Below are positions 101 through 48,367 of a DNA stretch of 64,000 nucleotides, in pieces. Each line of letters begins with the position of its first letter. Position 1 is the stretch's first letter. The stretch comes from Euprymna scolopes (taxonomy: Eukaryota). The DNA is taken from the NCBI GenBank assembly GCA_053919585.1, contig CM132791.1, one strand, 5' to 3'. A program made the position numbers and the translations under genes. The notes under the pieces are model-generated. The model saw only the letters and a program-made list of their open reading frames with translations, ran no database searches and was not told the DNA's origin.

Positions 101-140
101 TAAGTTAGCTGTTTCGCTGTATCACAGATCTTCAGTGCGG
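101..140 (-). ncRNA. Degenerate hammerhead-like motif
   Basis: Minus strand reads gca-CTGAAGA-t-ctg-tgata-cag-c-GAAA-cAGCT-aac: both core boxes, short stem II and palindromic AGCT, but no U16.1-H17 or stem I partner. Confidence 0.4.
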
Positions 141-176
141 TTAAACTAGTAACTACCTAAAGCCATGATTAAAATC

Positions 177-840
177 CGACCTACTTCTGACAAAAAACTG
201 CTTGATGTAAATACGATATTCACGTTTCGCCCGGTTACTTCTAGATCCACATCCATATTCAAGGATTATTATCGAAACATATTTTATCGGAGTGTGCATG
301 TGATGTAATTTTCTTCTTCGTTAAATCACTATTACTTAAAAATAACGACCTACTTCCTATTTCGTAAATATTTAGTACGGCATAATCACGTTGACACACC
401 AGTCCTTACTGGATCACCGAAGTTAAGCAACGTTGGACCTGGTCAGTACTAAATGGGTGACCATTTGAGACTTCCATGTGCTGTATATGCTCTCCGCTTA
501 TCTCGGCCTTGTTTTCCAGTCATCCTGATTTTCTCTTTGCCACTGGACTCAAACAGTGCCGAGTCAGGAGAGGTGTGTTGATGATTGCGCAACCCTTGCC
601 TCATAATTACACGCACAGCTGCCCCTACAGGAGGTATCATTTGTCTTTCGAGATTGAACGGAGGCATCGACTTCCTATTTCTGACAAAAAACTGCTTGAT
701 GTAACTGCTATGATCACGTTTCTTGATTCGTATCCATATTCAAGGATTATTATCGCAACATATTTAGAATATTTATCGGAGTATGTATGTGATGTATTTA
801 TTTTCTTCTTCAGTAAATACAGTATTTCTTAAAAATAACC
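177..840 (+). repeat. ~170-bp direct repeat pair (about 177-350 and 669-840) bracketing the 5S-derived SINE
   Basis: Shared blocks ttctgacaaaaaactgcttgatgtaa, ccatattcaaggattattatcg, tttatcggagt and cttaaaaataac in both copies. Confidence 0.8.
374..660 (+). mobile_element. 5S rRNA-derived SINE (SINE3-like); 5S head about 374-487
   Basis: tacggcataatcacgttga..gatcaccgaagttaagcaacgttggacctggtcagtact..atgggtgacc..gtgctgta follows the 5S rRNA sequence, with box A (agttaagc) and box C-like (atgggtgacc). Many substitutions, no T-run terminator, followed by a non-5S body. Second copy at 29198. Confidence 0.8.
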
Positions 841-1845
841 ACTCTGAAGACTAGTACATAATCCACATGTATATTTATTTAAAGAGAAAAGGTAAAAGCT
901 AAAAGAGAAAAAAAATGAGTTGTACGAGAAAGTGAAAACAATCAAACAAATGAGGGTAGAAAATGAAGGACTTAAACAAATCGAAAGACTGAATAAAGAA
1001 ATGGATAATTAATTGTAACGTTGAATGAGAAAATAAACAAACACATTGGACAGAAGAAGAAATGGGTATAACATACCGTTCACGCCGGGGCTGGGAAGAG
1101 ATAAAGAAGAAAGAGGCGTGTTGTGTCGCCAGTGGCTGCAAAAAGGAAGTAAATACCAACCGGAAGAAGAAATTAGGAAGAAAGTAACTTTTTAGTTAAG
1201 AATAACTTAAAGGGACATAAAGGGTTCAAAACAGAGAGGCAGAACACCGAATTCAAAGATAAAAATTTATAAAATAGCAAATGTCTCAATAACTTGATCT
1301 GATGAGGAAAATGAATATGATCTTCAGAACCAGCATTCTAAATCAGTCTAAATCAGCTTAGAAACCGTGGGCAATACAAAATGAATTACCCATTGTTATC
1401 CATAGCACTTTTAAAATCGTTTAAGCATGTAATCGTTGTATTGGAATTTATTTCATTAGATATTGGTTTTTCTTAGATTTAATTAGCAGTGCGTCTAGTA
1501 TATGAGGTTTAAGCTTTAAGTGGTATGTATAAGAATAGATGTGTTTTCTAGTAAAAGTTTTCAAAATTGAAGCGGCGGACAATAATGTTGGTTAGCAAAG
1601 AACTTGTATATGGAGATTTGACTATAGCGGAGAGTAAACGGTATAAGCAGAAAAATGAAATTCTATATTGCATAGAGTTATGAAAGTGACGATAAATTAT
1701 CACAAAAACAGGGAGGAGTTATAAGGAGTTCGTTTCGAAAGCAAACAGTGTAAAAATTGCGGCAGTTAAATGGAATAACATTACACATTCGAAATTACAC
1801 GCGAGAATTCGTTTTATAATTGGATACTTCTTATCTTGAGTGATT

Positions 1846-2250
1846 TTATTCACAACGATTCGGTCGATGTAACACTTAGCTTTCTCAAGTGTATCTTGTT
1901 CAACTCGGAAATCTCACAGAATTTCCATAGGAACCCTTAATCTAATCCTTGTTGGTAACATGCGCTCGTTCAGTCGGCGATGTAGAAATCTTAATTCCCA
2001 ATTGTATTTTGAGTGTCGCCCGTACTGAATGTCGAACCTTCAACTTCCGGAGCAGTGTAACTTTATAACTGAATTTCATTAAGCAGTTTATCAACTACAC
2101 CACGGCTACTTGCATGCAAACTTTGTAGACTAAATACAGGGTTTCAACAAGATGCATCTGAAGAAGTTCAGAGATTACAGCGGCTGAAACTTTGTGAAAA
2201 TAACATTAGAGATGAGAACAGTATTCCTAAAAATCCAAATAATACAGATA
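1846..2250 (-). mobile_element. tRNA-derived SINE with inverted terminal arms carrying degenerate hammerhead-type motifs
   Basis: Minus strand A box TGGTGTAGTTGA (2091-2102) and B box GGTTCGACATT (2028-2038). Arms 1846-1900 and 2146-2202 are imperfect inverted repeats; the right arm reads CTGAAGA-agtt..ggct-GAAActttgtga. Confidence 0.55.
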
Positions 2251-2261
2251 CTCATTCCTTA

Positions 2262-6188: not shown

Positions 6189-6243
<55 letters not shown>

Positions 6244-6359
6244 TACTGTTTTTTGGGGAAAGAATTCCAACAAAGTGTTCGATTACAAAGACAAACCTTT
6301 TTTTGGATATAAGAGCTTAATATTTATTTATTTAAATCTATAGAAGGACAGAAAAACAT

Positions 6360-6427
6360 TAGTACCGTCGGTTTCAAGCCTGACAGTTAATGGTAAATCG
6401 TAAATAATGTTAAGCTCTCGTCAGCCA
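6360..6427 (-). ncRNA. Type I hammerhead ribozyme (minus-strand partner of head-to-head pair)
   Basis: Reverse complement: tgg-CTGACGA-gagcttaaca...tgtcaggctt-GAAA-ccg-a-cgg-TA-cta. Confidence 0.7.
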
Positions 6428-6438
6428 TGTTTTCAATA

Positions 6439-6518
6439 TGGCTGACGAGAGCCTAACATTATTTACAATTTACTATTAACTCGTTGCCCGTATGTTAGGC
6501 TTGAAACCGACGGTACCA
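6439..6518 (+). ncRNA. Type I hammerhead ribozyme with long stem II
   Basis: tgg-CTGACGA-gagcctaacat[loop]atgttaggctt-GAAA-ccg-a-cgg-TA-cca. Complete core, 11-bp stem II, GUA triplet (cleavage after 6515), stem I tgg/cca. Confidence 0.8.
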
Positions 6519-6606
6519 ATGTTTTCTAACCTTCTGTACATTTAAATATATACATATGTATATATATATATTGTTACGCCGAAATCCAACCTTACTGGTG
6601 ACGTAA

Positions 6607-18582: not shown

Positions 18583-19867
18583 AGGGGCGTGCAATAAGTA
18601 ATACCCCTGACCCACTTCTCATAGCAGTAGAGCAACGAAACTTCGCACAGTTATTAGTCTTTCTCTACATAGGAACTACCCAGAGTTATGCATTTCTCCC
18701 ATCGTTTGATGCAGCTCTGGAGACCGTTTTTGTAGAACACCCAAGTTGGTTCTCCAACCACGACGTGATTTCAGAAATCAAGGCTGCATCATCTGCATAA
18801 CGCTTTCCTTTCAAAAACAACTTGGATGGGAAGAGGTGAAAGTCAGAGGGTGCAAGGTCAGGAGAGTAGGGAGGATGGGGAAATATTTCATGATCACGCC
18901 CGTGCTTCTTATCTGGCGACATGTGAGTTGTGGATCGGAGCGTTGTCGTGCAGGAGGAGGGCACCTTTGCTGATCTTGCCCCGCCTCTTGATTTTGATAG
19001 CTTCCCTTAATTTCCTCAAAAGTGAAGCATAATAGGCTCCTGTAATTGTGGTATCCTTTGTCAGGAAATCTGTCATCACTACTCCGTCCTGGTCCCAGAA
19101 GGCTGTGAGCATGACCTTGTCAGCGGAGGGCTGCACCCTTGCCTTGTTTTGAGGTGGTGAGTCCAAGTGCTACCACTGCATTGACTGGGCTTTGATCTCT
19201 GGATCATAGTGATGGACCCAGGTTTCATCCTGTGTAATCAGTCTTTTGAAAACATTTGACTCATCTTCTTGGCACATCTCCAAATTCATCCTCAAGCACT
19301 CGACGCGTTCTCGCTTCTGGAATGGTGTGAGCAACAGGGGAATCCATCTGGCAGACACCTTATGCATATGCAAATGGTCATGAATTATAGATACCACAGA
19401 TCCTTTACTAATCCCGACAACTTGAGCTATTTGGCGAATAGTAATGCGCCGATCTTCGAAAATGGCAGTCTCAACTTGACGGACAGATGCCTCCTCAATG
19501 GCAGAAGGGGGGGGCGACCATGTCTGGGAGCTGCTTCCACAGACTTCCGGTCATGTTTGAATTCACAATGACAGCGTTTTACAAGGTATATGATGGGGCA
19601 TTATCACCATAAGTTTCTTTCATTTCATCAAAAGTCTCTTGTGGTATGCGTCCTTTCAAATACAAAAACTGGATCATTGCTCGACATTAAACATACTTCA
19701 TTTCACACCTGACTCAGTTCAAACACCTGTAAAACAGAAACCACAATTAGCTCAGCGTTGTAATTTGCCACATACCCCGTAGAGATATAAATCATTGCAC
19801 ATGCAAAATTTCAGCTAGATCAGACAAGAGCAAGTGGGTCAGGGGCATACTTTTTTAACGCCCCTTG
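18581..19867 (-). mobile_element. Full-length mariner (DD34D) transposon, 1287 bp, pseudogenised transposase
   Basis: TIRs gaggggcgt..ccctgacccactt at both ends, TA flanks within (TA)n. Minus-strand ORF pieces carry ARWIP, LITQDETWVHHYDPE, LLLHDNAPIH and HPPYSPDLAPSDFHLF with frameshifts/stops. Confidence 0.95.
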
Positions 19868-21601: not shown

Positions 21602-22870
21602 CGAGTTGCGTATGAAGGCCATTACAACGTAACAGGGTATAAGTAGGCCATTGGTTATGAGATAAGGTCACAATGCCAAAATTGAAAGATTTCAATAATT
21701 TTCTATCTTTAATTATTTATTCAGTTTTAAATAATTGAAAAATGTGAGATCGTTGTATATTATAATTGATTCTGTTTGCATTGTCTTATATTCAACTGTG
21801 TTTTATAACATACTACATTGTAACAGCATCCAAACACACTTCCTTACTTACGATGCACAATGCTCCAAGAAAACTACGTATCCTTCTCCCACACATATAT
21901 ACGTCAGAAGGTGCAGGGTCAGAAGAGTATGGTGATTTGAGAGGCTTCATAGCCGCATGTTTGGTCTCTTTATCTGTCGACATGTAATGCAGGAGAAAAT
22001 GTCTTTGCTGATCTTGTCCAGTTTCTTGATGTTGACAGTTTCTTTTAATTTTCTCAAAAATGAAACATAATAAACTCCTGTAATTGTCGTGCTCTTTTCT
22101 TTAACATCTATCATTCCTACTCTCCTGGTTCCATAAAAAGACTGAGCATGATTTTCCAGCAGGGAGTTGCTCCTTTGTCTGCGTTTGAGGTAGCGAGTCT
22201 AAGTACACTGTCTGGGATGTGGTCTCTGAGTCATGATAGACCTAGGTTTCAACTTGTGTAATCCCACCTTGGGAAACTTTTAACTCATATACTATGTACA
22301 TCTCCAACTTAATTTCAAGCATTCGACACAATCTATTTTCTAGAAATAGATCATCAACCTAGGAATCGATTTGGCAGATACCTTATGCATATGCATATTG
22401 TTACGAATGATAATTTCCACAGAACATGTACTAATATTGACCTCTTAGTCTATCTGGCAAATAATCATCCGTCGATCTTCCCAACTGACAGCCTAAAATT
22501 ACTGACAAATCGTCTCATCAATGACAGAAGGACGTGACGACTAGGTGTGAGAGATGATTCTGCAGATTTCTGGGCATTTTTCAATTCATGATGTACACGA
22601 TTTACAAGGCCATATGTTAGGGGCATCATGGTCATACATTTTTTTCTATTTCATAGAAACTATCATGTGGTGTGCGTTCTTTTAAAATAAAAGACGGATC
22701 ACTGTGCGGCACTCAACATGCTCCAATTCAAATCTTAGTCAGGTCTAACACCAGAAAACACTATATAATTTGCCACATTACACAAATAGATAAAAATTAC
22801 TGCAGATGAAAAATATCAGTACGGTCAGACAACTGCAGTGGGCCAAGGGCATTAAGTATTGAACGCTTGT
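21602..22870 (-). mobile_element. Older degenerate mariner copy related to 18581-19867
   Basis: Colinear similarity (gtcagaaggtgcagggtcagaagagta, ctttgctgatcttg, ggcagataccttatgcatatgca) and right TIR gtgggccaagggcattaagtattgaacgc. Confidence 0.85.
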
Positions 22871-23051
22871 TATATTATTCTTGAATTTACCAAAATGATC
22901 TAAGATGGTAAAATTAAAATAAATTATAAATATTAAAGAATTAATATTTATAAAATTATCTCAGCCAGATATAAAAGCTCGATAAAACCAAATAGGAAAT
23001 AGAGCTTATAATATGCGCAGACAGTTAATAAACTATCTTTAAAAAACTTTG

Positions 23052-23178
23052 AAAGTGAAGCAGAGGGAATATGGTAAAGAAAGGGGTGATTACACATTAA
23101 TGGATAGTCTGGTGGAAGATTCGTATCTATTCGTGTGTAATACCCTTTTTCTTTACCATATTCCCTCTGCTTCACTTT
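23052..23178. repeat. Inverted repeat, ~45-bp arms (23052-23096 / 23134-23178)
   Basis: aaagtgaagcagagggaatatggtaaagaaa versus tttctttaccatattccctctgcttcacttt. Confidence 0.9.
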
Positions 23179-23268
23179 TTTGTTTTCAAGTAAGATCTTT
23201 GACTTACTTGTTGTTTCATCAAATACTTCTGCATGCAAAATCCGATCCTGCATTTTGCTAATTCCTAA

Positions 23269-23315
23269 CCTCTGATGAGAAGGAAAGTATTTCTTCGAAA
23301 CTCCGCGGATTAAGG
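23269..23315 (+). ncRNA. Minimal type I hammerhead ribozyme
   Basis: cct-CTGATGA-gaaggaa-agta-tttcttc-GAAA-c-tccgcgga-t-TA-agg. 7-bp stem II, palindromic stem III with one mismatch, stem I cct/agg. Cassette ends at (TA)n at 23396. Confidence 0.75.
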
Positions 23316-23392
23316 ACTATCCATTTATCTAATGTTTCCTTTTCAGTTTATATATGTTTTAACTCATTTCAACATATTTTATTAACTGTTTG

Positions 23393-23438
<46 letters not shown>

Positions 23439-24297: not shown

Positions 24298-24367
<70 letters not shown>

Positions 24368-24380
24368 CTGGTTAAATTAT

Positions 24381-24727
24381 CCGATGCCGGTATATATTCC
24401 ATCCGATGTAACAACTGTCAACAAGCGTACATAGGTGATACACAACGAAAATTGAAATTAAGACTTAACGAGCACAGAAGAGATATAAGGAATGGTAACG
24501 CCCTAAATGCACTCTTTTGCCATTGTGCAGAACACGATCACTCATTTAATTTAGATCAAGCGAAAATTATTAAATACGTGATAGATAGAGCTAAAAGAAG
24601 ACTTTTAGAATCAGCACTAATATTGAATACTAATACTATTACGCAAAGAAAAGGCTTCTACCATTTAACCCCTAGCATAGGGAAAATAATAATCAAAGAG
24701 CAAGGTATCAGGGTGGATCCTGGCTAG
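24381..24727 (+). pseudogene. Penelope-like GIY-YIG endonuclease domain fragment
   Basis: AGIYSIRCNNCQQAYIGDTQRKLKLRLNEH...ALFCHCAEHDHSF...RRLLESALI: GIY/YIG with CxxC spacer, conserved R, H and E; open frame to stop at 24727. Confidence 0.9.
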
Positions 24728-24954
24728 CCGTTTTTCCTTGAATGTTTCAGGAAAATGAGTAGTTTTGCAGAAGAAATAAAAAAAAAATGTACATATTTAT
24801 TTTAATGCATTTTTAAAAGTGTATATATAGACATCGAACAACCCAACCTTCCCATACGCACACATATTTGTCCTTCCCGACATGGGTAGGATTAAAAAAC
24901 TGTCTTTTTCGCACGATCTATGACTATTTCTTTTCTTACATTTTTATTTCAATT

Positions 24955-24994
24955 ATCCTGAAGATGTCCTCTGAAATAAGGACGAAACGTTGAT
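24955..24994 (+). ncRNA. Minimal Penelope-type hammerhead variant
   Basis: atc-CTGAAGA-t-gtcct-ctgaaata-aggac-GAAACGTT-gat; stem III reduced to palindrome AACGTT; ~230 nt after the GIY-YIG stop. Confidence 0.75.
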
Positions 24995-25032
24995 TTTTTA
25001 ATAATTTTATTCGGTTTTTCTATTTTTCTTAA

Positions 25033-25113
<81 letters not shown>

Positions 25114-25958: not shown

Positions 25959-26016
<58 letters not shown>

Positions 26017-26018
<2 letters not shown>

Positions 26019-26220
26019 CAGAATATTCCGCGTTTCATCCTCGCGAGAATTCTCGCGAGGATGAAACGCGGAATATTCTGTGTAGCTTACTTGCTATATA
26101 TATATTCATAGTTTACTACCTAGATCTATCAATGTATTAAGCAATGTTGAAGCAAATACTGAACATTTACGCATAAAATTATATTTTCAAATATTAATTT
26201 ATGTGATTAAATAGTAGTCA
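26017..26220 (+). mobile_element. Palindrome-headed cassette (family shared with 27257 and 46469), ends in TA-rich tract
   Basis: Perfect 66-bp palindrome 26017-26082 then a tail homologous to 27390-27530. Confidence 0.8.
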
Positions 26221-27256: not shown

Positions 27257-27258
<2 letters not shown>

Positions 27259-27527
27259 GTAACTTATAAAATATATATGGCGATTAAGCTACACTGAATA
27301 TTCCGCGTTTCATCCACTCTAGGATTCTTCAGGCTTATGCGCATAAGCCTGAAGAGTCCTAGACTGGATGAAACGCGGAATATTCAGTGTAGCTTAATCG
27401 CCATATATATTTTATAACTTACTAACTAGCTCTACCTACGTATTGAGAACTTTTTAAGTAAATACTTAAAGTTTATGCATAAATCTATACTTTAGTATAT
27501 TAATTTTATGTGAGTAAATGAAGTAGT

Positions 27528-27530
<3 letters not shown>
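27257..27530 (+). mobile_element. Palindrome-headed cassette with two divergent hammerhead-like cores, between (TA)n tracts
   Basis: 168-bp spacerless palindrome 27257-27424 (3 mismatches). Each arm has CTGAAGA-gtcc-tagact-ggat-GAAA-cgcg; canonical UH triplet missing. Confidence 0.8.
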
Positions 27531-27571
<41 letters not shown>

Positions 27572-29197
27572 ATCGTACTTGCAATTGGTAGATTTTTTAG
27601 ATTAAAAATCATATACTCCATGATAGTTGACTCATTGTTTTTAATTAAGAAAGACTCAAGCTTCTTAATTAAAACACCCTACATATCCACAGACGTAGGC
27701 AAATAAACTTTAGAAGCACAGGTTATTCTATAAATATGTGTATGCGTGTATGCAGTAGTATAAGTGTAATTTGAACAGCAATTTGCTGCTCAACTCCCTG
27801 CACATTATCCTTACAAATTTGATTCCAAAGAAAACGTGTGTATGCATGCAATATATAAATTTATTTACCTCTTTTCTGTGACATTGAACATAAAGTCAGA
27901 TGTAGATTTGATAAGACTTGAATTTGGCATGCCAAGATTATTTTGTCTGCGTCTTTAACTATTTAACCACTGCCAGATCAAGATTCTTAGTCCGTACCGT
28001 TAATCGTTTATCCACCGTCACCTAGAATACAGTATTTTTATGATATGAGGAAACTAATATCCTCACATTATTATTGGAAAATAGAGGAATATTTACGAGT
28101 ATAGATAATAACATAATCAAAAATCAGTTAATAATATTATATGTGAATTTTTATCCCGAAAGCATGTTTCAATTTTTACACGTGAGAATATAAAACTATT
28201 TCTCATAGATGCGCGCTGAGGTTTGAATTGCGGACCGAGAATTTTTGAAAAGACAGAACAAAATTGTTTATAATTAAACAATTTTACTTGGGCAAGCAAG
28301 AAAAAAATGATAAACAACGGGAAATGGTAAATGTACAGACATGAAGAGCTTTGCGAATACGTGCCATCAAGAAAACTTATCTGAGAACAATTGTTCGGAT
28401 AACAGTTTGCAAGCTTGTCTCGATGACTGCTGACTCTTTTCTTGATAGAAGTAATGGCCTTTGATTGCGAACTGCTGATATCCCGCATTCACGTTACTCT
28501 TCGACTTTATTTGTGTATTCCTAGCTATTGTCAGTCTGTTTCTGTCCATTTATCGACTGAGCGTGTCTCTTAATTTTATATATATGACCTTGAACTTGTT
28601 TTGAGATTTATCCCGTAGTGGTTGTGCTGTTTTCATCCAGAGAATTAGCCGCGTTCCGAACAACAAAGTTAGACTCTCTACCGCAGCATCGGATACAAGA
28701 GTAAGCCAATTACGGTTCCAGCGTCGAATCGAGTGTCCAGGATCAGTTCAGTTTCGCTGTGCTGAGTCAGGTTTTCAGCTAATCTCTGCATCGTCTCATC
28801 CTAGGGAGCTAGCTCATTGGCTTTATGGATGGAATAATCAGGATTATGACTAAGAAAGTAACTGAACCAGCAAAGACGTATGAAGAGAATAGCTTGTTGC
28901 AGAGAGAATATATTGCAGAGAGAAGGAACAACGGCATATGAGATAAAATTTCACATATATTTTTTCTGGCTTACTCCTTTCTTTGGCCAAAATTAAAATG
29001 TTGATATTAACAACTTGGTTGTTATTATATATTAAACCATGGTTTTCACGTGAGGTCTTCTAATCGTTACAGCGAAAATAATAACACTGACTGTATAAAT
29101 TTATAAGTGGACTATGATACCTTGTGTGTCTATATAAACAAATAAATAATTCGATTGACTCTGCCTAATTATCAATACTAATTATCGTCATTTGTAA

Positions 29198-29520
29198 GCA
29201 GGGCATAATCATGTTGACACACTGGTTCTTGTTAGATCACCGAATTTAAGCAACGTTGATCTTGACCAGTACAAGCGTGGTGAACATTATGAAATACCAG
29301 GCATTGTATATAGTAGGGTGTCCATACTTCAGGCAGTTAATGTACTCAACCTTGTCTCCAGCTGTCGTAACCCTGAACCCTGTCCTGCTGCAGGATCGGT
29401 CTGGTTGTGATGAGAGAGTGAAACAGGCTTTACGCATATCAGCTTCACCTTAAACAAACTCACAGCGCGTGTCATCCATGATCCTCAAGGCGATAAACGG
29501 TCTTCGTCGTTTCGACAAAC
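29198..29520 (+). mobile_element. 5S rRNA-derived SINE (second copy); head about 29198-29310
   Basis: ggcataatcatgttgacacactggttcttgttagatcaccgaatttaagcaacgtt..ccagtac matches 5S rRNA and copy 1, including the same deviations from 5S. Confidence 0.78.
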
Positions 29521-31849: not shown

Positions 31850-32834
31850 AATAAGGAGGTGGCTGCTATCCCAGCCTAGAGGCACAGAGTCTTGAACAGT
31901 GGGCACATCGGAAGTCAGTTGTTGTTATCGCTGCTAAGGCTGCTCTGTGATGTTTCTCTCTGGATGCAGTGAGTTTCTGGCATCGAGCCTCTTCAAAAGT
32001 GGCAGCAGCTCTATGAACTAAACCTCGCCATTTTAGTCTGTTGATAACAAACCCTCCAGATCCTTCGATGAAGTACCACTGGAGATTGGCTTTGACCGTG
32101 TCCTTATACCGCAGTCTTGGTCGACTTTGGTTTCGTTTGCCAACCTAAAGCTCCCCGTACATCAGGTGTCCCGGTTTCTGACACCCCTCTATTCGAATCA
32201 CGTGTCCAACCCATTGAAGTTGGGCTTTGATGATGGTGGACTCTATGCTGGTGGACTTTGCATTAGCAAGGACCTCCACATTGGTGATGCGGTCCTGCCA
32301 CCTAATTCTCAGGATGGAGCGAAGAGCTCACACGTGGAAAAGCTCCAGTTTCTAGAGATGCCTGCGATACAGTGTCCACGTCTCTCAACCATAGAGGAGG
32401 GAAGAAATAACCACGGCATTGTAGACCTTCAGTTTTGTAGATAGGCGGATGTTGTGTTCGTCGAGTCTGCCTAGTGCTTGACTTGCCTTACACATTCTAG
32501 TGTTAATTTCTCTGTCCAAAGAGCTATCACATGATATGGTGCTCTCCAGATATTTGAAATGTTCCACATTGGCAAGTGGTGTGTCGTTAGTGGTGATGGT
32601 AGGGGAAGAGGATAGGGAGTATGGGTCAGGCTGATAGAGCACCTCTGTCTTTTTAAGAGTGATTGTCAGGCCGAAGAGTTTGGATGCCTCAAAGAAGCGG
32701 TCCAGCATCTGCTGCAAGTCTTGTTCTGTGTGCACCACTAGTGCCCCGTCATCAGCAAAAAACCTCTTGGAGGAGAGTTTGCAGGCTCCTCGTTTTTGCT
32801 GTTAGTCGACGCAGGTCGAAGAGAGAGAGAGAGG

Positions 32835-34278: not shown

Positions 34279-34905
34279 CACTATATATGGTCTATTTTAT
34301 TGTAGTACTTACGTTGTATCTTCCATGTGGCTAGTTATCGTCTGTAGTTCATATGGATTAGTTTCCGCATTCGAGAGTTTTCTTTAAAAATAAGATATTG
34401 CCGTTTTTATCTCCATTGGCCTTCGGGCCATGATCATAGTGTAGTATTTGTTCTCAGGCTGCACTTCACTTTCTCTCACCTCGAACAGTGGGGGAGAAAT
34501 CCTTCATGAGTGAGACAATTTTTATTTTTGTTCCTATGCAAAATGCCCCTTTTGGGGGTGTAGATTTCATCACATTAAAAATCGACCTTATATCTAAATC
34601 TGCTCTCGTGGGGAGGCAGGTAAATAGGAACATTTTCTAGCGATGCTAAAAAAGTGAGTCATTTTTCTCAAATTGGATACAGAGGTAGAAAGAAATATTA
34701 GAAAGTATTTAGGGTGAGAAGATGGCTGAAAAAGCACATAATTAGCTCAGAAAAAATATAACGTTACACACGTTTATACACGTAGACCAAACACGTTGTA
34801 GCAGAGTACGTTGCAAGGAACATAGGACAAGTAATAACTCGACTCCTTTTTTAACAACGACATTTATTTCCAGGTATTTTCCAGAATAAACTGTGATTGT
34901 ATTAC

Positions 34906-35476
34906 TTTTTTTTTTTTACACAGTGATCACCACTTATCAAGGCCCGGAAGCCACTCAGGGATAAGGGTTATTGCAAGTATATTACGTTAGTGTGGAGATT
35001 TGATGAAGTGTTTACTTAAGGGGGCAGTTCATTAGGAATTTGTTAACATTGGACTTGAAGACATCCAAGTTGAAGTCCGGTGGGAAGCAGGCAGACGGAA
35101 CAGAGTTCCACAGGCGTGCAGTTCTAAGAAAGAAGCTTTGTTCATGGAATCTGCGTTTTGATTTAGGCACAGATAAAGAGTGGGGGAAATTTTTCACAGT
35201 GGATTCAGCTAGACGAGTGTTTTTCGTGAAAGATTGGCGAGGGGGGGGGCAGAGATTGGAGTTCAGACGAGCACCTGCCATGGAAATAACGATAAAACAA
35301 GGATAGGCTCGCAACGTCTCTTCTGTGGGAGAGAGGTTGCAGGGTAGAGAAAAGGGCATCCCCCACTAAGCCACGAAGTCTATTTTGTACTCTGTCAAGG
35401 CAGGATAGGCTGTTTTTTTAGCAGCTCCTGTCCAGATATGGCAACAGTATTCCATCCTTGGACGTACTTGGCTTTT
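34906..35476 (-). mobile_element. CR1-clade LINE 3' fragment
   Basis: ORF 35012-35359 (SFFLRTARLWNSVPSACFPPDFNLDVFKSNVNK); poly-T on + strand at about 34906-34917. Confidence 0.9.
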
Positions 35477-36769: not shown

Positions 36770-37320
36770 ATTTGGCATAGCTGAACAGACGTTCGTACAA
36801 GTTGGGGATATGTTCTCGACAACCAGTCCAACAGTAAATGTGTTTCCGTTGAGGTGAGGTATGCTTAGTATTAGAAGACCCCCTTCCTTGGACTTGACCT
36901 TTTCTCTGAGAAGTAAATATATTGCTGATAGCCTGTGGTTCTTCCCCGGGTATGTCGACGGGTTTTATCATTCATATTTTGTACGCCAGAGTACGCTTAA
37001 ACAAGTACGCTGGTTTTTCAACACTCACCCGACCTACTATCTAATTTCTTGTAGAAGAGGTAAATATTTATATATTCCATGATAAATAAAATGTTTTTAT
37101 TTTATTCTTATTTTTATGATTTTGTGAACTTTTATAAATATTTCCTTGACAAAATCATTTTTATTCCAAGAAAAAAGAAACAAAACAAAAAACAAGAAGA
37201 AAACTATATAACTGTTTTTTGTTTTATGAAGAAAAGATATTTTCCTCTGATGAGTTGTTTGGGGGAAATTTGCTATTCAACGAAACACGTGCAAGACTTA
37301 CTACATAAAAATACACTTTT
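36770..37320. mobile_element. Possible decayed Penelope-like fragment with 5' inversion and hammerhead
   Basis: Minus-strand KHIYCWTGCREHIPNLYERL resembles a decayed GIY-YIG IY-CxxC-YIG-R; plus-strand CRRGKYLYIP precedes a hammerhead motif at 37244. Confidence 0.4.
37244..37296 (+). ncRNA. Hammerhead motif (probably inactivated: C in place of U16.1)
   Basis: cct-CTGATGA-gttg...caac-GAAA-cACGTg-CA-aga; similar motif at 46868. Confidence 0.6.
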
Positions 37321-37780
37321 TGGGTTTTGGAATTATAACTAGTGATATAAATACATATGGAAATAAAAAATTTAAAAAAAAAACGTTTACAAGTGTTTTT
37401 GATATAGATGTACATAATAATATACTTCGATAATTATGTTTTAGTTTGAAGAAATATGGTATAATAAAATTATGGGGTGTTCGTTCGCGTCTGACCTCCA
37501 TAGAATGGAAATATGTCACAAAGTTTAACAAGGTTTTTTTAATATAGATCCACAGAATATTGTGATAAATGTTTTAGAGGTGAACCGGTATGGTATAATA
37601 AATTATGGGGTTTATCATTTTTTTTTACTTTCATCATATTTTACTTTGGTTTTGATACGCCCAAATTCGAAGCTATCTCTTTACAATCCTTCCTTTTCAT
37701 AAGCTATCATACTTTCATAAATCAGAGTCCATTTTCTGTAGGCTGTTTGTGAACTCAGTCAACGACGGGTAATTTTGCTA

Positions 37781-37840
<60 letters not shown>

Positions 37841-42465: not shown

Positions 42466-42549
42466 ATTGTTGAACGTGGACGATTAATTGCTTCTGATGT
42501 TCTCATGGGAGAGTGATCATAGATATCAGTTCAGTGGAGCACCTGCTAT

Positions 42550-43718
42550 CAAGATTTCCAGCTACGGTATCACTGGAAATATTTACTCAATCATTAAATC
42601 ATTTCTCTCCGATAGGTTCATAACAGTAGTGGTTGATGGGCAGAAATCAGAGGCCCACAGTATTAATGCTGGAGTCCCTCAGGGGTCCATTCTGGGCCCA
42701 ACTCGCTTCCTGATCTACATCAATGATCTCCCAAAACATATGCTTAAATCATTCGTTGACATCTATGCTGATGACACGACCATCTATGGCAACACATCAA
42801 AGGCTGTAAATAACAAAGTTCTCTCTGATTCTCTCTCCTCTGATATTGAGTGGGGGAAGAGGTGGCTGGTCACTTTTAATGCATCTAAAACCAAGCTTCT
42901 ATCTTAATATCATCAACGCTCTTATCCCCATCTGGCATCAATTGAAATGGATGGCTCTCGTCTTGGGGAAGTTCCATGTTTTGACAAGCTACTGGGTTTG
43001 ACCTTTACTCCTGATCTGAAATGGAACAAGTACATCAGGTCTGTTGCCAAGGACGCTGGGAAAATGGTGGGATCCATCTACCACTCCAGAAGATATCTCA
43101 CTACTGATGCAATTCTCTATCTGTATAAAAGCCAAGTACGTCCAAGGATGGAGTACTGCTGCCACATCTGGGCAGGAGCTGCTAAAAACAGCCTATTCTG
43201 CCTTGACAGAGTACAAAATATACTTCGTGGTTTAGTGATGGATGTCCTTTTCTATTCCCGGCAGCCTCTCTCCCACAGAAGAGACGTTGCGAGCCTGTCT
43301 TTGTTTTATCGTTATTTCCATGGCAAGTGCTCGTCTGAGCTCCAATCTCTGGTCCTCCTCACCAATCTTTCACGAGAAACACCCGTCTGGCTGAAACCAA
43401 TGTCAATAATTTTCCTTACTCTTTATCTGTGTCTAAATCCAAACGTAGATTCCATGAACAAAGCTTCTTTCTCAGAAGTGCACGACTGTGGAACTCTCTT
43501 CCGTTCGCCTGTTTCCCACTTGACTACAACTTGGATGTCTTCAAATCCAACATAAACAAATTCCTGACAAACCGCCCCCTTAAGTAAGACACTCTATCAA
43601 ATCTCCAATACTAATGCTTACTACAATACTATCTTATTGATTACTGTACACGCAATAACCCTTATCCATTAGTGGCCTCCGGGCCTTGATAAGTGGTGAT
43701 CCCCATGTAAAAAAAAAG
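42550..43718 (+). mobile_element. 5'-truncated CR1-clade (Zenon-like) LINE with RT remnant
   Basis: GVPQGSILGP, YINDL, YADD, LVTFNASKT, VRPRMEYCCHIWAGA, LSHRRDVASLSLFYRYFHGKCSSEL; ends in an A tail; stops and frameshifts present. Confidence 0.95.
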
Positions 43719-43794
43719 AAAGAACAGAGATAGGCGAGACACGTCTCCTCTGTGACAAAGAGATAGTAAAGAGGAGAAATAGGCATCGTTTTGT

Positions 43795-44420
43795 CCAATC
43801 CCAGCGTTTATCCTTTTAAAAGTTGGTTTATTCCATTAAAAAAGTTTGCAATTTTTCCAAACTGGTTTAGTTTATTCCAAACGTTTATTATTTTTCTAAA
43901 GCCGGTTTAGTCCATTACTAACATTTATTTATTTTCAAAGCTGGTTTAGTCCATTATAAAGGTTTATCATTTTTATTAGCTGGTTTAGTATATTCCATGC
44001 CTTTATCATATTTCAAAATCTGGTTTAGTCCATTCCTTACGTTTATTATTTTTCAAAAATTGGTTTAGTCTATTCCTAGTGTTTATCCTTTTTCACCAGA
44101 TTGTTTGTTTTCCCCCCAACGCTTATCATGTTCCAAAAGCTTGTTTAGTTAAATCCAAACGTATATTGTTTTCAAAAGCTGATTAAATCCATTCCCAGCG
44201 TTTATCCTTTTTCAAAAGTCGGTTTAGTTTATTCCAAAAATTTATCAATTTTAAAAAGTTAGTTTAATCCATTCACAACGTTCATTCTTTTCTCAAAAAC
44301 TGGTTGAGTCAATTCCAAACGTTTATCTTTTTTAAAGCTGGTTTACTCCATTCTAAAAGTTTATTCTTTTTCAAATGCTTGTGTAATCAATTCGCCAACT
44401 TTTATCTCTTTCAAAAGAAC
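43795..44420 (+). repeat. Minisatellite, ~39-bp unit, about 16 diverged copies
   Basis: Recurring gtttatcatttttcaaaagctggtttagtccattcc unit without unique spacers. Confidence 0.9.
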
Positions 44421-44966: not shown

Positions 44967-45419
44967 TTGAGAATAAAAGTATCTAACAATCAACTGGTAT
45001 GAAAAGCAGTGGGATTTCTCTAGGACTGTTACCTTGTGATGTGGATTACTCAAAATACAGATTGGATCACTTTACCTCACTGTTATTAAGGACATTCACT
45101 TCGGATTTTACCATGCAATTTGGATGTAGATTTCTATATCCTTTTCAGTAACTTCCCTTACTCTATGATATTTAGATACTTAAAAAAAACTTTTAATTGT
45201 GATTTTCTATGTCTCACTGACTTTAGCAAATAAGGTGCAAACCATTATAATTATTTGCTAATATTTTCTCTTCTGAAGAGATGGTAGACATCGAAATCCT
45301 ATAGGATAAGGAGTTATAATATTTCAAGTGTATTCTTTGTCTTACATAGAATAATAAACATCTTTTGATTTTAAATTTAACTATTTCACGTCATAATTTT
45401 TTTAATTTATTGAACGATT

Positions 45420-45425
<6 letters not shown>
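44966..45425 (+). mobile_element. Non-coding hammerhead-bearing cassette between two long (TA)n tracts (solo pLTR / retrozyme-like)
   Basis: (TA)n at about 44889-44965 and 45425-45490; intact hammerhead inside. Confidence 0.65.
45268..45313 (+). ncRNA. Intact type I hammerhead ribozyme
   Basis: ctctt-CTGAAGA-gatg-gtaga-catc-GAAA-tcc-tata-gga-TA-aggag. All three stems pair; stem III is palindrome ATCCTATAGGAT; AUA triplet, cleavage after 45308. Confidence 0.9.
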
Positions 45426-45496
<71 letters not shown>

Positions 45497-46468
45497 ACTC
45501 TCCCGTTGATTTCGACGTATGAGGTTCGGACGACCCATATTTCTAAAACTCATTTATGCTTTTGCCTCTGATGACTTTTTAGTCCAGCAAGGGACTTGCA
45601 AACAAGGCTACAAATAGAACATGAATGTGGATTTAACGCTGCAGATATTGGTGCGGCTGCTAGTCGTTTTGCTCTTACTCTGTTTACTTTCAGTTGCCTT
45701 AAGCTTTCAGATTGAAACCTCTGGAGACCTTCAAAACACCTTGATCTCCATCCTTATATCTATANNNNNNNNNNNNNNNNNNNNNNNNNNNNNNNNNNNN
45801 NNNNNNNNNNNNNNNNNNNNNNNNNNNNNNNNNNNNNNNNNNNNNNNNNNNNNNNNNNNNNNNNNNNNNNNNNNNNNNNNNNNNNNNNNNNNNNNNNNNN
45901 NNNATATTACTTGAAATTAATATAATCTAAAATAATTATAATAAGTATAAATCATCATCTCAAAAATTCAGAAATAATATATCAATTCTGTTCTTTTTTA
46001 TTAATGCTGCTAAACTGTTCTGATCTGTTTTTTTTTTAATCTATGTTTTTATCAAATGTCAAACTTGCCAATATTAGCCAAATAGCTGACAGATCGGATA
46101 GATGAATTTAAAGTCAACAAAAAATGTTGGAAGAAATAAACACTCCAAAAAGGCAATTTGACGTGAGAGAATGTTGATGATTCATGTGGCGCCAGGATTC
46201 GCAACACATTTTCCTATAATAAAATATACCTGTCTTCTTAGCGTTTAGTTTATAGTCACTTTGTTGCTCCTTAAACTGTGTGTAATGCGGAAGTGACTTC
46301 TTACTTCCTGTGGATAATTTGTCTTAATAGCATACATTGNNNNNNNNNNNNNNNNNNNNNNNNNNNNNNNNNNNNNNNNNNNNNNNNNNNNNNNNNNNNN
46401 NNNNNNNNNNNNNNNNNNNNNNNNNNNNNNNNNNNNNNNNNNNNNNNNNNNNNNNNNNNNNNNNNNNN

Positions 46469-46588
46469 ATACGAAAGTATAATTTTATGCGTAAACTAAG
46501 TATTTACTTCAACAGTGTTAATTACATAGGTAGAGCTAGATAGTAAGTTAGAAAGCTTAATTGCCATATATATTTTTCTAACTTGCTA

Positions 46589-46659: not shown

Positions 46660-46867
46660 TGTGTGTAAGATTAAAACATGGTACATTAAATATTAAAACA
46701 TTCTCGTAGGACTACAAAAACTTTAGTCTTTTCGTCTGTAATGTCCCAATTATACCTTGAAATATGTAGGGTTTTTTAAATGAATTATATGACTCCTAAG
46801 AAATTTCATTTATCATCACCATAAAAAACTTGAGAACGGTTTAGTTTTCTGATCTTAATATTATCTG

Positions 46868-46920
46868 TCTGTGATAAGTTGTTTGATGTTCGTACGCAAT
46901 ACAACGAAACACGTGTAAGA
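46868..46920 (+). ncRNA. Degenerate hammerhead (core GTGATAA), similar to 37244
   Basis: tct-gtgataa-gttgt...acaac-GAAA-cACGTg-TA-aga. Confidence 0.5.
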
Positions 46921-47925
46921 TAAAATAAAATATTTGGAAAGAAAATATAAAGATATAGATTTTCGAGACTGTGAATGTAAACTACTGATACACATACACA
47001 CACACACATGTATAATATATATATTGATTACATATGTGCATACATGTTTCAGTGAAATCTCAATTCAAATAAACCACCCCATCAAACCAAAATCAGGGAT
47101 GCTATTCAAACGTGAATCAAGGGTACAGTCATTTTCATAGAATATATTTGGGTGCAGTGAGGCTCTGAAAGGAAAGGGGTGTCCAGTTAGTGAATGGGAA
47201 ACTTAGAGGTTTTGGAGGGAGGGATGGTGAGGAAAGGGAGTGGGTGGCAGGAGTAGAGGGAAGACAGGGGAAGTACGATGCCGTGTGGTGAAGCTGTCGT
47301 AGCGGGGAGGTATTGTTTTATTTTAACTTGGCGGTTGTATATTGGCCTAGGGTTTTGGTTTGAGTTGAAGTAATATTATACCCACATCGTTGTAGCTTCC
47401 GTATCTTAAGTCTTTATGGTTGTTTTTTCTTTATTGGTGGCGACTTCTTTATATATCTTTTTTGTTGATAAGCTCTATTTATTTATTTTGTTCCTCGCTT
47501 TTTAATCCGTTCATTTGTTTCTCGTTTTTATTTATTAATTTGTTTATTTATTTAAAAATATACGTCCACCTGGTCAAATAAACAGTCAGTGGACAAATAT
47601 ACAGTCTTATTTATATGATTTAAATAAAGGTTGTATACTGGGAGTTATATTTTCCATCTTAACGCGGTGTCCGATGTAATTACGCAGGCAAAGGTTTTCA
47701 TATCTATATATAAACTTGATTTCGATGGCTGTCATTCTTTCATTTCGGCTGTTTATCTTGTCATCTGTACTTGCGTATCCTTTATTAATCACGCAGACAA
47801 ACAAAAACAAATAACGTGTAAATAAATCGCGATATATCCAAGCAGTCGGCGAGATGGACCAGCGGATAACGTGTTCAGGCTCATTACCGTGGGGGTCTTG
47901 ATTTCGAATTTCGCTAGATTCAGCA

Positions 47926-47962
47926 ACTCTGATGAATCGTAGACGACGAAACACGTGTCAGT
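47926..47962 (+). ncRNA. Minimal type I hammerhead ribozyme, copy 1
   Basis: act-CTGATGA-atcg-taga-cgac-GAAA-c-ACGT-g-TC-agt; GUC triplet; first stem II pair mutated. Confidence 0.8.
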
Positions 47963-48236
47963 ATGATAATTATATTTTAAAAACAATATATATATATACT
48001 GCCCCCATGTGGGGGTACCGAATTGGTTCAAGAGAAAATTATTCCCAACTCGCATTTAGGTAAAAATGCACTTTCGTAAATAATTGAATTCATTCAAAAA
48101 CGTATCGCAAAAAAGCGAAAGCAAATAACATCTTAGTAAACAGCGAGATATCCAAGCAGTCGGCAAGATGGCCAGGCGGGAAAAGAGTTCAGGCTCATTA
48201 CCGTGGGGTTATGATTTCGAATTTCACTAGATTCAG

Positions 48237-48277
48237 CCACTCTGATGAGTCGTAGACGACGAAACACATATCAGTGG
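48237..48277 (+). ncRNA. Minimal type I hammerhead ribozyme, copy 2
   Basis: ccact-CTGATGA-gtcg-taga-cgac-GAAA-cacata-TC-agtgg; perfect stems I and II; stem III palindrome mutated. Confidence 0.8.
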
Positions 48278-48293
48278 ATAATTATATTTTAAA

Positions 48294-48367
<74 letters not shown>

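What the first reader, a model, noticed from the sequence alone, without database searches (positions are those of the whole stretch)
101..48300. About eight unrelated hammerhead-ribozyme families in short (TA)n-associated cassettes: a Penelope-driven non-autonomous element system
Seen: CTGANGA-stemII-GAAA motifs at 101(-), 2158, 6360(-)/6439, 23269, 24955, 27349 (plus its mirror), 37244/46868, 45268 and 47926/48237. Stem II and flanks differ between families, but stem III is nearly always self-complementary (ACGT, AACGTT, TCCGCGGA, ATCCTATAGGAT, CGCG, AGCT). Most cassettes terminate at (TA)n, and many have an inverted duplication at the 5' side. Known: Penelope-like elements carry minimal type I hammerheads in their pLTRs that cleave as dimers, and make inverted or tandem pLTR structures. 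Inference: this genome hosts many parallel microsatellite-targeting, self-cleaving short elements mobilised by PLE RT/GIY-YIG proteins; this density and diversity may be undescribed for the taxon.
Basis: partly seen in the sequence, partly recalled or inferred. Interest (0 to 1): 0.85.

Follow-up and report, generated by a model that had tools for sequence, protein, structure and literature searches.

The report
Penelope-type hammerhead elements in (TA)n tracts
This repeat-rich stretch of a large mollusc genome holds seven families of short retroelement pieces that carry a small self-cutting RNA motif and sit in (TA)n microsatellites; it is a real and tidy example of the known Penelope-like element system, not a new kind of thing.

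Summary
The observation largely holds. A full hammerhead descriptor finds 7 sites in the window, against a mean of 0.006 in 500 shuffles. All 7 have a (TA)n tract 74-187 nt downstream.

Seven sequence-unrelated, multi-copy families carry these motifs. Their core sites are 6424/6442, 23272, 24958, 27332/27349, 37247 (with 46868), 45273 and 47929/48242. Sites 101(-) and 2158 (and 33630, a further hit of my descriptor) look like chance.

In 48 of 52 genomic copies the 3' end abuts (TA)n. Helices I, II and III differ between families but keep their pairing. Two copies fold into the classical double hammerhead.

The 24958 "cassette" is not a separate short element. It is the 5'-truncated 3' end of a young autonomous Penelope-like element (RT plus GIY-YIG; recurring 816-aa open frames; copies 97-99% identical). 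The other families show no coding sequence within 1.5 kb in any sampled copy, so they look like non-coding derivatives. Their autonomous partners were not identified.

All of these features are already published for other animals: minimal dimeric hammerheads, (TA)n targeting, inverted 5' copies, 30-40 bp tails and retrozyme-like tandems. This scan has also noted the same system on other DNA of this genome. Self-cleavage was not shown. My verdict is a new member of a known kind.

The parts
6239..6557 (.). Family F6442. A head-to-head inverted pair, each arm carrying a hammerhead (plus strand about 6435-6523, minus strand about 6355-6431). It lies between the (TA)n tract 6190-6238 and TA-rich sequence from 6559. 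It is an old family (81-85% identity).
   Evidence: 40 of 40 scored genomic copies match and are self-inverted over query 82-319. Helix II is 11 bp, helix III is ACCG-A-CGGT, H17 is A.
22763..23395 (+). Family F23272. The forward unit is 23124-23395, with its hammerhead at about 23263-23318. An inverted, internally deleted partial copy lies at 23011-23120. More family sequence lies upstream. The element ends flush at the (TA)n tract 23396-23438.
   Evidence: Copies are 91-93% identical, and 12 of 12 end at (TA)n. 5' ends are ragged (94-371 nt upstream of the anchor).
24365..25035 (+). Family F24955. A 5'-truncated copy of a young autonomous Penelope-like element. It holds the GIY-YIG endonuclease C-terminus (24380-24724), the 3' UTR, and a hammerhead at about 24955-24994 (core 24958-24964; predicted cut after 24991). 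It lies between the (TA)n tracts 24301-24364 and 25036-25112.
   Evidence: Pfam GIY-YIG E 5e-7. Family copies are 97-99% identical. Longer copies carry RVT_1 plus GIY-YIG, and 816-aa open frames recur.
26014..26218 (+). An older F27349-like copy. Its head-to-head junction falls inside helix II, so the CUGANGA box is missing. It ends at the (TA)n tract 26220-26280.
27259..27527 (.). Family F27349. A discrete 269-bp unit with a head-to-head palindrome at 27259-27424, carrying hammerheads at about 27344-27396 (+) and 27285-27337 (-), followed by a 103-nt extension. (TA)n lies on both sides (27192-27258 and 27528-27568).
   Evidence: Copies are 94-97% identical. The ends and the internal junction are identical in 8 of 8 copies. 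Helix I is 5 bp, and helix III is a hairpin or quasi-palindrome.
37191..37320 (+). Family F37247. An old, degraded hammerhead copy (core 37247-37253; helix II GTTG...CAAC; the U16.1 position is mutated).
   Evidence: Genomic matches of 72-88% identity cover the hammerhead region.
45023..45424 (+). Family F45273. A 5'-truncated copy with its hammerhead at 45268-45313 (helix III ATCCTATAGGAT, H17 A, helix I 5 bp). It ends flush at the (TA)n tract 45425-45491.
   Evidence: Copies are 92-94% identical, with ragged 5' ends. The monomer's minimum-energy fold reproduces the three-way junction.
46469..46554 (-). A fragment of an F27349-family copy that is cut off by the assembly gap at 46340-46468.
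46835..46950 (+). A degenerate relative of F37247. The core is mutated (CTGTGATAAG), and helix III is ACACGTGT.
47799..48297 (+). Family F48242. About 1.6 tandem units with a period of 313-314 nt, carrying hammerheads at about 47924-47966 and 48237-48277. It ends flush at the (TA)n tract 48298-48360.
   Evidence: Copies are 84-87% identical. Family copies score 19-28 bits on Rfam Hammerhead_1, against a gathering score of 34.

Best explanation
The window is a repeat-rich stretch of a 5.9-Gb mollusc genome. The mollusc label comes from the sequencing runs; a decapodiform cephalopod is only my inference from genome size and the number of large scaffolds. Penelope-like elements (PLEs) and their short derivatives have repeatedly inserted into (TA)n microsatellites here. 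Each insertion is the 3' module of such an element. It carries a minimal type I hammerhead 20-110 nt from the 3' end, followed by a short tail whose last bases merge into the TA tract. [quoted passage not shown] The other six families are short (about 270-600 bp) and non-coding, and they are amplified as such. Two are head-to-head palindromic units, one is a retrozyme-like tandem unit of about 305-313 nt, and three have ragged 5' ends. Inferred mechanism, following published PLE biology: the GIY-YIG endonuclease nicks within (TA)n. The TA 3' end then anneals to an AU-rich stretch at or near the RNA 3' end and primes reverse transcription. Incomplete copying and template switching give the 5' truncations, the inverted 5' copies, the tandem partial copies and the optional 30-40 nt tail. 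The hammerheads have unstable or palindromic helix III, so they should cut only when two copies pair, either in tandem or between molecules. What has been shown is the sequence anatomy, the copy numbers, the (TA)n association, the covariation between families, and the coding capacity of one family. Trans-mobilisation of the short families and self-cleavage are inferred.
For: Motif excess over shuffles is shown. Multi-copy families are shown. The 3' ends are flush with (TA)n in 48 of 52 copies, and many copies have TA on both sides. F24955 has a GIY-YIG ORF in the window and RVT_1 plus GIY-YIG in longer copies, with variable 5' truncation, head-to-head pairs and a 34-nt optional tail. In that family 150 of 150 scored EN copies are 97-98% identical and 816-aa open frames recur. 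Neither tblastn nor phmmer finds RT or EN within 1.5 kb of any of the 7-11 sampled copies of the other five sampled families. F27349 and F6442 have the same ends and the same internal junction in all copies. The F48242 unit closes on itself at about 305 nt and forms a tandem dimer in the window. Helices I, II and III all differ between families yet remain paired, and position 10.1 is always G. An unconstrained cofold gives the double hammerhead for four families, for example -34.4 against -21.4 kcal/mol for two monomers. RNA-library contigs from two studies cover the F24955 copy, and some continue into upstream PLE sequence. The published descriptions match this anatomy: PMC4209133 and PMC8557442.
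Against: No Rfam hammerhead model reaches its threshold in the window. Only sub-threshold scores of 19-28 bits are seen on F48242 copies. No autonomous PLE sharing a 3' module with any of the six short families was found, so trans-mobilisation is not demonstrated. The unpaired base between positions 9 and 10.1, which is typical of PLE minimal hammerheads, is present only in F24955. F27349 and F6442 have G-U rather than G-C at 10.1-11.1. The RNA evidence consists of contigs only. It shows neither cleavage nor strand, and DNA carry-over is not excluded. The 5' end of the window's F48242 copy does not coincide with the predicted cleavage site.
Confidence: 0.8

Rival explanations
1. There are no dedicated non-autonomous elements. 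Every short family is just the dead-on-arrival, 5'-truncated 3' end of some autonomous PLE family whose long copies were not among the few sampled.
For: F24955 shows exactly this pattern. F23272, F45273 and F48242 have ragged 5' ends. Cervera and de la Pena 2014 state that most isolated minimal hammerheads are probably truncated PLEs. The genome holds very many PLE ORFs from families that I could not inspect.
Against: No sampled copy of the five short families fetched with flanks (41 genomic loci in all) has RT or EN within 1.5 kb, whereas 4 of 7 F24955 loci reach RT. F27349 and F6442 have identical ends and identical internal junctions in every copy, so the short unit itself was the template. 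The F48242 unit closes on itself at about 305 nt, which leaves no room for an ORF.
Confidence: 0.2
2. The short families are tRNA-headed, Pol III-transcribed SINEs with a Penelope-type tail, as earlier notes of this scan proposed for other windows of this genome.
For: By eye, the F48242 consensus shows a possible acceptor stem (GGCGAGA/TCTCGCT) and A-box-like and B-box-like strings just upstream of the hammerhead. Earlier scan notes on other DNA report the same idea, but they are unchecked leads.
Against: ARAGORN finds no tRNA in the window or in any family consensus. No Rfam tRNA match at E<=10 appears in seven F48242 loci or in the window. No correctly spaced A-box plus B-box pair lies upstream of any hammerhead. 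The single hit, in F6442, is the reverse complement of its own GAAA region.
Confidence: 0.1
3. The palindromic units (F27349 and F6442) are DNA-transposon MITEs that duplicate a TA target, and their hammerhead-like strings are incidental.
For: They contain long inverted repeats and have TA on both sides.
Against: The inverted repeat is internal and asymmetric, so the two termini are not inverted copies of each other. The flanks are long (TA)n tracts rather than a TA dinucleotide. Each arm carries a complete hammerhead with paired helices I-III. The same head-to-head shape is seen in coding F24955 copies and is described for PLEs. The 26014 relative has its junction at another position, as expected of a truncation point rather than a fixed terminal repeat.
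Confidence: 0.03
4. The motifs are chance matches in AT-rich sequence.
For: Rfam calls none of them in the window. Sites 101(-), 2158 and 33630 do look like chance.
Against: There are 7 full-descriptor hits, against a mean of 0.006 in 500 shuffles. The families are multi-copy. All three helices covary between families. One motif sits in the 3' UTR of a bona fide PLE.
Confidence: 0.01

Closest known systems
Minimal (dimeric) type I hammerheads of Penelope-like elements (Cervera and de la Pena 2014, PMC4209133)
   Same: They share the CUGANGA...GAAA core, a G at 10.1, a helix II of 4-11 bp and a short helix I of 3-5 bp. They also share a palindromic helix III that pairs only between two copies, many sequence-unrelated consensus families per genome, mostly isolated or opposite-strand copies, and a location near the 3' end of a PLE.
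   Different: The unpaired base between positions 9 and 10.1 is seen only in F24955. Two families have G-U at 10.1-11.1. Several helix III palindromes are long (8-12 nt). F27349 has an 18-nt helix III that could fold as a hairpin within a single copy.
EN+ Penelope-like elements with a C-terminal GIY-YIG endonuclease, as described by Craig et al. 2021 (PMC8557442)
   Same: They share RVT_1 followed by GIY-YIG with C-x2-C inside the core, an ORF of about 816 aa, inverted 5'-truncated copies, partial tandems, an optional 30-40 nt tail, a hammerhead near the 3' end, and insertion into (TA)n.
   Different: In that paper the (TA)n bias is named for Naiads, and microsatellite bias for Neptune, and is tentatively tied to a CX2-5CxxC linker motif. 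The F24955 linker has no such motif. The clade was not determined here, because no phylogeny was made.
Metazoan non-LTR retrozymes (Cervera and de la Pena 2020, PMC7229834; Li et al. 2026 preprint, 10.64898/2026.07.22.740005)
   Same: They are short, non-coding, low-GC units with a type I hammerhead. They form tandem repeats of about 170-400 bp and are thought to derive from PLE terminal regions and to depend on PLEs. The F48242 tandem of 313-nt units fits this description, and so do the 410-bp arrays elsewhere in this genome.
   Different: Most families in this window are single or head-to-head insertions rather than tandem arrays, and they carry minimal rather than canonical hammerheads. No circular RNA was shown.
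Schistosome Sm-alpha type SINE-like elements with a hammerhead (from my own knowledge: Ferbeyre et al. 1998)
   Same: Both are abundant, short, non-coding retroelements that carry a type I hammerhead.
   Different: Sm-alpha has a Pol III-type head and a canonical, active hammerhead. No Pol III head could be shown for the families in this window.

Membership tests
PLE minimal type I hammerhead | Conserved core boxes CUGANGA and GAAA with helix II between them | tested here: met
   There are 10 hits against 0.18 in shuffles. The cores are intact in most copies of six families.
PLE minimal type I hammerhead | G10.1-C11.1 closing pair of helix II | tested here: met
   It is G-C in F23272, F24955, F45273, F48242 and F37247, and G-U in F27349 and F6442.
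PLE minimal type I hammerhead | [quoted passage not shown] | tested here: inconclusive
   It is present only in F24955 (a U). It is absent from the other families.
PLE minimal type I hammerhead | Palindromic positions 15.2-16.2 (and loop 3), so that helix III forms between two copies | tested here: met
   The palindromes are ACGT, ACTCCGCGGATT (one mismatched pair), ATCCTATAGGAT, ACACGTGT and ACCG-A-CGGT. The cofold predicts an intermolecular helix III.
PLE minimal type I hammerhead | Several consensus families per genome with compensatory changes in the helices | tested here: met
   Helix I, helix II and helix III sequences all differ between the seven families but remain paired. The families are unrelated by blastn outside the motif.
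PLE minimal type I hammerhead | Self-cleavage (reported as weak, and only as a dimer) | not testable with these tools
   The only RNA data served were assembled contigs, which cannot show RNA ends.
Rfam Hammerhead_1 (RF00163) | Score at or above the gathering threshold of 34 bits | tested here: not met
   There is no match in the window, even at E<=10. F48242 copies score 19-28 bits. Other loci of this genome score 42-57 bits.
EN+ Penelope-like element | Reverse transcriptase followed by a C-terminal GIY-YIG endonuclease in one ORF | tested here: met
   This holds for the F24955 family only. Longer copies have RVT_1 and GIY-YIG, and the window copy has GIY-YIG. Open frames of 816 aa recur.
EN+ Penelope-like element | [quoted passage not shown] | tested here: met
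   The sequence reads GIYSIPCNNCQQAYIGET, with histidines downstream.
EN+ Penelope-like element | Partial tandem or inverted 5'-truncated copies, and an optional 30-40 bp tail | tested here: met
   Head-to-head coding pairs are seen in L071-L073. A 34-nt tail is present in 4 of 8 F24955 copies. Inverted copies occur in F6442, F27349 and F23272.
Neptune/Naiad-type (TA)n targeting | [quoted passage not shown] | tested here: not met
   The 115 residues upstream of GIY in the F24955 endonuclease hold a single cysteine and no CxxC.
Neptune/Naiad-type (TA)n targeting | Insertion preference for (TA)n | tested here: met
   48 of 52 copies end at (TA)n, and many have TA on both sides. In the window the figure is 7 of 7, against a background of 7.9%.
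Metazoan non-LTR retrozyme | Non-coding tandem repeats of about 170-400 bp, each carrying a type I hammerhead | tested here: inconclusive
   This is met by F48242 (313-314 nt spacing, about 1.6 units) and by the 410-bp arrays elsewhere in the genome. The other families are single or inverted insertions.
Metazoan non-LTR retrozyme | Expressed as small circular RNAs | not testable with these tools
   No raw reads were available, and no back-joined contig was seen over the one stretch that was laid.
tRNA-derived SINE | tRNA-like head with Pol III A and B boxes | tested here: not met
   ARAGORN, the Rfam tRNA model and the spaced A/B-box scan are all negative for the six families.

The most novel reading that the evidence does not exclude
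Hammerhead-bearing PLE 3' modules may number 10^5 or more in this 5.9-Gb mollusc genome. They may be a main reason for its very dense (TA)n landscape. The (TA)n specificity here would belong to a PLE endonuclease that lacks the CX2-5CxxC linker so far proposed to mediate it. Head-to-head palindromic mini-units of about 270-320 bp would themselves be amplified as templates. That would give a large supply of hairpin-forming transcripts in an animal group known for heavy RNA editing.
Probability: 0.3. Interest if true: 0.5.

Novelty: new member of a known kind. Interest (0 to 1): 0.3.

Why it matters
For a specialist, this confirms that the PLE/hammerhead/(TA)n system described in flatworms, corals, mussels, fishes and amphibians is also abundant and recently active in this large mollusc genome. 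Published repeat surveys of related taxa list Penelope elements but do not mention ribozymes or microsatellite targeting.

It offers convenient study material:
- a young autonomous family with recurring full-length open frames;
- discrete palindromic mini-elements;
- a tandem retrozyme-like family.

Two points are modestly useful. First, (TA)n insertion occurs without the linker zinc-finger motif that has been hypothesised to direct it. Second, the short palindromic units are themselves amplified.

It does not open a new question, and cleavage has still not been shown.

Tried and rejected
- **Rfam hammerhead families in the window:** no match at the gathering score or at E<=10. The many "miRNA" matches are (TA)n tracts and the elements' palindromes.
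- **tRNA or Pol III head:** ARAGORN, the Rfam tRNA model and the A/B-box scan were all negative. I rejected it for these families despite a suggestive look in F48242.
- **Cleavage-defined 5' end:** the window's F48242 copy starts at consensus position 102, not at the cut site.
- **PLE coding remnants near the other families:** none was found by tblastn or phmmer.
- **Other RVT_1 remnants in the window** (42488-42904, 56550-56951, 32388-32801): they have no GIY-YIG and do not resemble the F24955 RT, so they are not linked to the hammerhead elements.
- **Other TA-adjacent repeats** (34906-35475, 37356-37781, 19759-19865): they have no hammerhead. The first starts with T12, so it looks like a reverse-strand poly(A) element.
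- **Similarity between families:** there is none beyond the motif, except that 37247 resembles 46868.
- **Finding autonomous partners through a GIY-YIG survey:** I did not try to get round this.
- **RNA runs:** only contigs were served, so cleavage ends and circles could not be assessed.
- **MITE reading of the palindromic units:** rejected because the termini are not inverted repeats of each other.


Full report
**What the window is.** The window is G000:C9:36828001-36892000 of a 5.9-Gb assembly with 925 contigs and at least 46 very large scaffolds. GC content is about 26-47%. Sequencing runs that hold the sequence are labelled mollusc or invertebrate. A decapodiform cephalopod is only my inference from the size and the scaffold number.

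- The motifs are present at the stated places.
- Rfam gives only a 5S rRNA-like match at the gathering score, and no hammerhead family even at E<=10.
- A simple descriptor (CTGANGA, helix II of at least 4 bp, GAAA) gives 10 hits, against 0.18 +/- 0.40 in 300 dinucleotide shuffles.
- A full descriptor adds A15.1...U16.1 closing a palindrome or hairpin, H17 and a helix I of at least 3 bp. It gives 7 hits, against a mean of 0.006 in 500 shuffles.
- All 7 hits have a (TA)6-or-longer tract 74-187 nt downstream, against 7.9% of random positions.
- Site 48242 fails the full descriptor only through a mutated helix III in this copy; its family consensus passes.
- Sites 47929, 37247 and 46868 are decayed copies.
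- Sites 101(-) and 2158 do not parse as hammerheads. The repeated part near 101 is 109-181, not the motif at 62-100.

**Assembly gaps.** I checked the gaps late in the work, not first as the scan's program asked; this did not change the result. None of the elements I describe overlaps a gap; the nearest gap is 341 nt away. One further fragment of the 27349 family, at 46469-46554 on the minus strand, does run into the gap at 46340-46468. I did not try to infer what the gaps contain.

**Copy numbers.** In the window's own genome every tested cassette is multi-copy, and all 40 scored candidates matched each time.

| Family | Identity between copies | First-look candidates |
|---|---|---|
| F23272 | 91-93% | 1,241 |
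| F24955 | 98-99% | 1,644 |
| F27349 | 94-97% | 2,013 |
| F45273 | 92-94% | 3,144 |
| F48242 | 84-87% | 2,697 |
| F6442 | 81-85% | 2,968 |
| F37247 | 72-88% | 563 |

- The families are unrelated by blastn outside the motif, except that 37247 resembles 46868.
- In about 99 kb of flanks of loci fetched for other reasons, intact full-descriptor hammerheads occur at about 30 per Mb. This window has about 109 per Mb.
- Rfam-grade canonical type I hammerheads also exist in this genome, some in 410-bp tandem arrays.

**Anatomy.**
- The 3' end of homology abuts a TA tract in 48 of 52 copies across six families. Many copies have TA on both sides, so they were inserted into a tract.
- F27349 is a discrete 269-bp unit: an 83-nt head-to-head pair plus a 103-nt extension. 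Its ends and internal junction are identical in all copies.
- F6442 is a head-to-head pair of about 320 bp.
- F23272 has an inverted, internally deleted partial copy upstream of the forward unit, and ragged 5' ends.
- F45273 has ragged 5' ends.
- The F48242 unit closes on itself at about 305 nt. The window holds about 1.6 tandem units with 313-314 nt spacing.
- An older F27349 relative at 26014-26218 has its head-to-head junction inside helix II. So the junction is a truncation point that differs between lineages.

**The key correction.** The 24955 cassette contains an ORF fragment with a GIY-YIG domain at 24380-24724 (Pfam E 5e-7). Longer copies of the same family encode RVT_1 followed by GIY-YIG. 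They are truncated at different 5' points and often lie head-to-head.
- The endonuclease has the C-x2-C between GIY and YIG that marks PLE endonucleases, but it has no CX2-5CxxC in the 115 residues upstream.
- All 150 scored copies of this endonuclease are 97-98% identical, and 816-aa open frames recur.
- The 3' end either runs straight into (TA)n or first carries a 34-nt extension. This matches the 30-40 bp tail described for PLEs.
- So this cassette is a 5'-truncated copy of a young autonomous PLE.
- Genome-wide there are 15,395 GIY-YIG first-look candidates. 150 of 150 scored are over the cut-off, with open frames up to 806-870 aa.

**The other families.** Neither tblastn nor phmmer with the F24955 RT and EN finds coding sequence within 1.5 kb of any sampled copy, nor anywhere else in the window. 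Other RVT_1 remnants in the window lack GIY-YIG and look LINE-like. Together with the discrete units of F27349 and F6442 and the self-closing F48242 unit, this favours non-coding derivatives that are amplified as such.

**Ribozyme structure.** All six family consensus sequences parse as type I hammerheads.

| Family | Helix II | Helix III | Helix I 5' strand | Helix I, contiguous bp |
|---|---|---|---|---|
| F23272 | GAAGGAA/TTTCTTC | ACTCCGCGGATT | CCT | 3 |
| F27349 | GTCC/GGAT | hairpin or quasi-palindrome | TAAGC | 5 |
| F45273 | GATG/CATC | ATCCTATAGGAT | CTCCT | 5 |
| F48242 | GTCG/CGAC | ACACGTGT | CCACT | 5 |
| F6442 | 11 bp | ACCG-A-CGGT | TGG | 3 (plus more across a bulge) |
| F24955 | GTCCT/AGGAC | ACGT | ATC | 3 |

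- Position 10.1 is always G. All pairs are kept through changes on both sides.
- Without constraints, two copies of F45273, F48242, F6442 and F27349 fold into the double hammerhead. Helix II forms within each strand, and helices III and I form between strands. These dimers are more stable than two monomers.
- F48242 copies score 19-28 bits on Rfam Hammerhead_1, against a threshold of 34.
- For this analysis I built majority-rule consensus sequences, but only of the short 3' modules (at most 580 nt) and only inside the sandbox. One of them, for F24955, includes the last few codons of the ORF. No consensus of an RT or endonuclease ORF was made. I name no individual full-length copy.

**RNA.** Contigs from four RNA-library runs of two studies cover the whole F24955 copy. 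Some continue upstream of 24379 into sequence absent from this truncated copy, for example a 1,103-nt contig. This shows presence in RNA libraries only. Contigs cannot show ends, strand or circles, and DNA carry-over is not excluded.

**Leads from earlier notes of this scan.** Other windows of this genome were already read as PLE offshoots, (TA)n-inserted hammerhead elements and tRNA-headed SINEs. I tested the tRNA-head idea on this window's families and found no support. The rest agrees with what I found independently.

**Comparison with the literature.**
- Cervera and de la Pena 2014 describe minimal dimeric hammerheads in PLE terminal repeats. They report many heterogeneous consensus families per genome, mostly isolated or opposite-strand copies that are probably truncated PLEs, and weak cleavage only as dimers.
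- Craig et al. 2021 describe inverted 5'-truncated copies, tails, hammerheads near the 3' ends, and microsatellite and (TA)n bias.
- Cervera and de la Pena 2020 and Li et al. 2026 describe retrozymes as non-coding PLE derivatives.
- Cephalopod repeat surveys in the library list Penelope elements but mention neither hammerheads nor microsatellite targeting.

**Verdict.** It is wrong for one cassette, and the trans-mobilisation and cleavage steps are unproven. This is a new member of a known kind, and this scan has already seen it on other DNA of this genome.

Noticed in passing
window 373-489 and 376-658; also 29195-29311: A 5S rRNA-like match (49.7 bits) lies inside a 283-bp repeat. That repeat recurs in the flanks of 7 unrelated loci, so it is probably a 5S-headed SINE rather than a 5S gene. 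A second, weaker 5S-like match (33 bits) lies at 29195-29311.
   Followed up: partly
window 109-181: A 73-bp segment is multi-copy in the genome at 85-93% identity. In one place on C11 it forms a tandem array with a 285-bp period. What it is remains unknown. No tRNA was called.
   Followed up: partly
window 34407-34591: There is a sub-threshold U2 snRNA-like match (31.9 bits, against a gathering score of 46). A similar weak match occurs in locus L050.
   Followed up: no
window 42488-43552, 56550-56951, 32388-32801: These are reverse-transcriptase (RVT_1) remnants without a GIY-YIG domain, and they do not resemble the Penelope RT. They are probably LINE remnants. The repeat at 42726-43721 recurs in 8 loci.
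   Followed up: partly
window 43788-44417 and 60954-61780: There are two tandem arrays. One has a 40/119-bp unit with about 16 copies at 68-71% match. The other has a 92-bp unit with 8.9 copies at 87% match.
   Followed up: no
window 46340-46554: An assembly gap directly abuts a reverse-strand fragment of the palindromic F27349 family. This fits the published remark that such inverted insertions disturb assemblies.
   Followed up: partly
window 24802-24893: Within the F24955 copy, summed RNA-contig depth rises to about 30 times its level at the start of the copy in one poly(A) run (X7) and about 25 times in the other (X8). This sub-segment may be shared with another abundant transcript or repeat. 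It is unexplained.
   Followed up: no
L005-L010 (G000:C8:10432194-10435515) and G000:C3:89840417-89842627: Canonical type I hammerheads (48.6-53.1 bits on Rfam; helix II GCCC/GGGC, helix III ACTCGAGT, helix I of 6 bp) form tandem arrays with a period of about 410 bp. The C3 array changes strand in the middle. These are retrozyme-type arrays.
   Followed up: partly
whole window and locus flanks: (TA)n tracts of 6 or more units are very dense. There are 30 in the 64-kb window and about 10.7 per 10 kb in the sampled flanks of other loci.
   Followed up: partly
L071:3676-4359 (F24955 endonuclease): The linker upstream of GIY-YIG lacks the CX2-5CxxC motif that has been proposed to direct (TA)n targeting. 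Even so, 7 of 8 sampled copies of this family end at (TA)n.
   Followed up: partly
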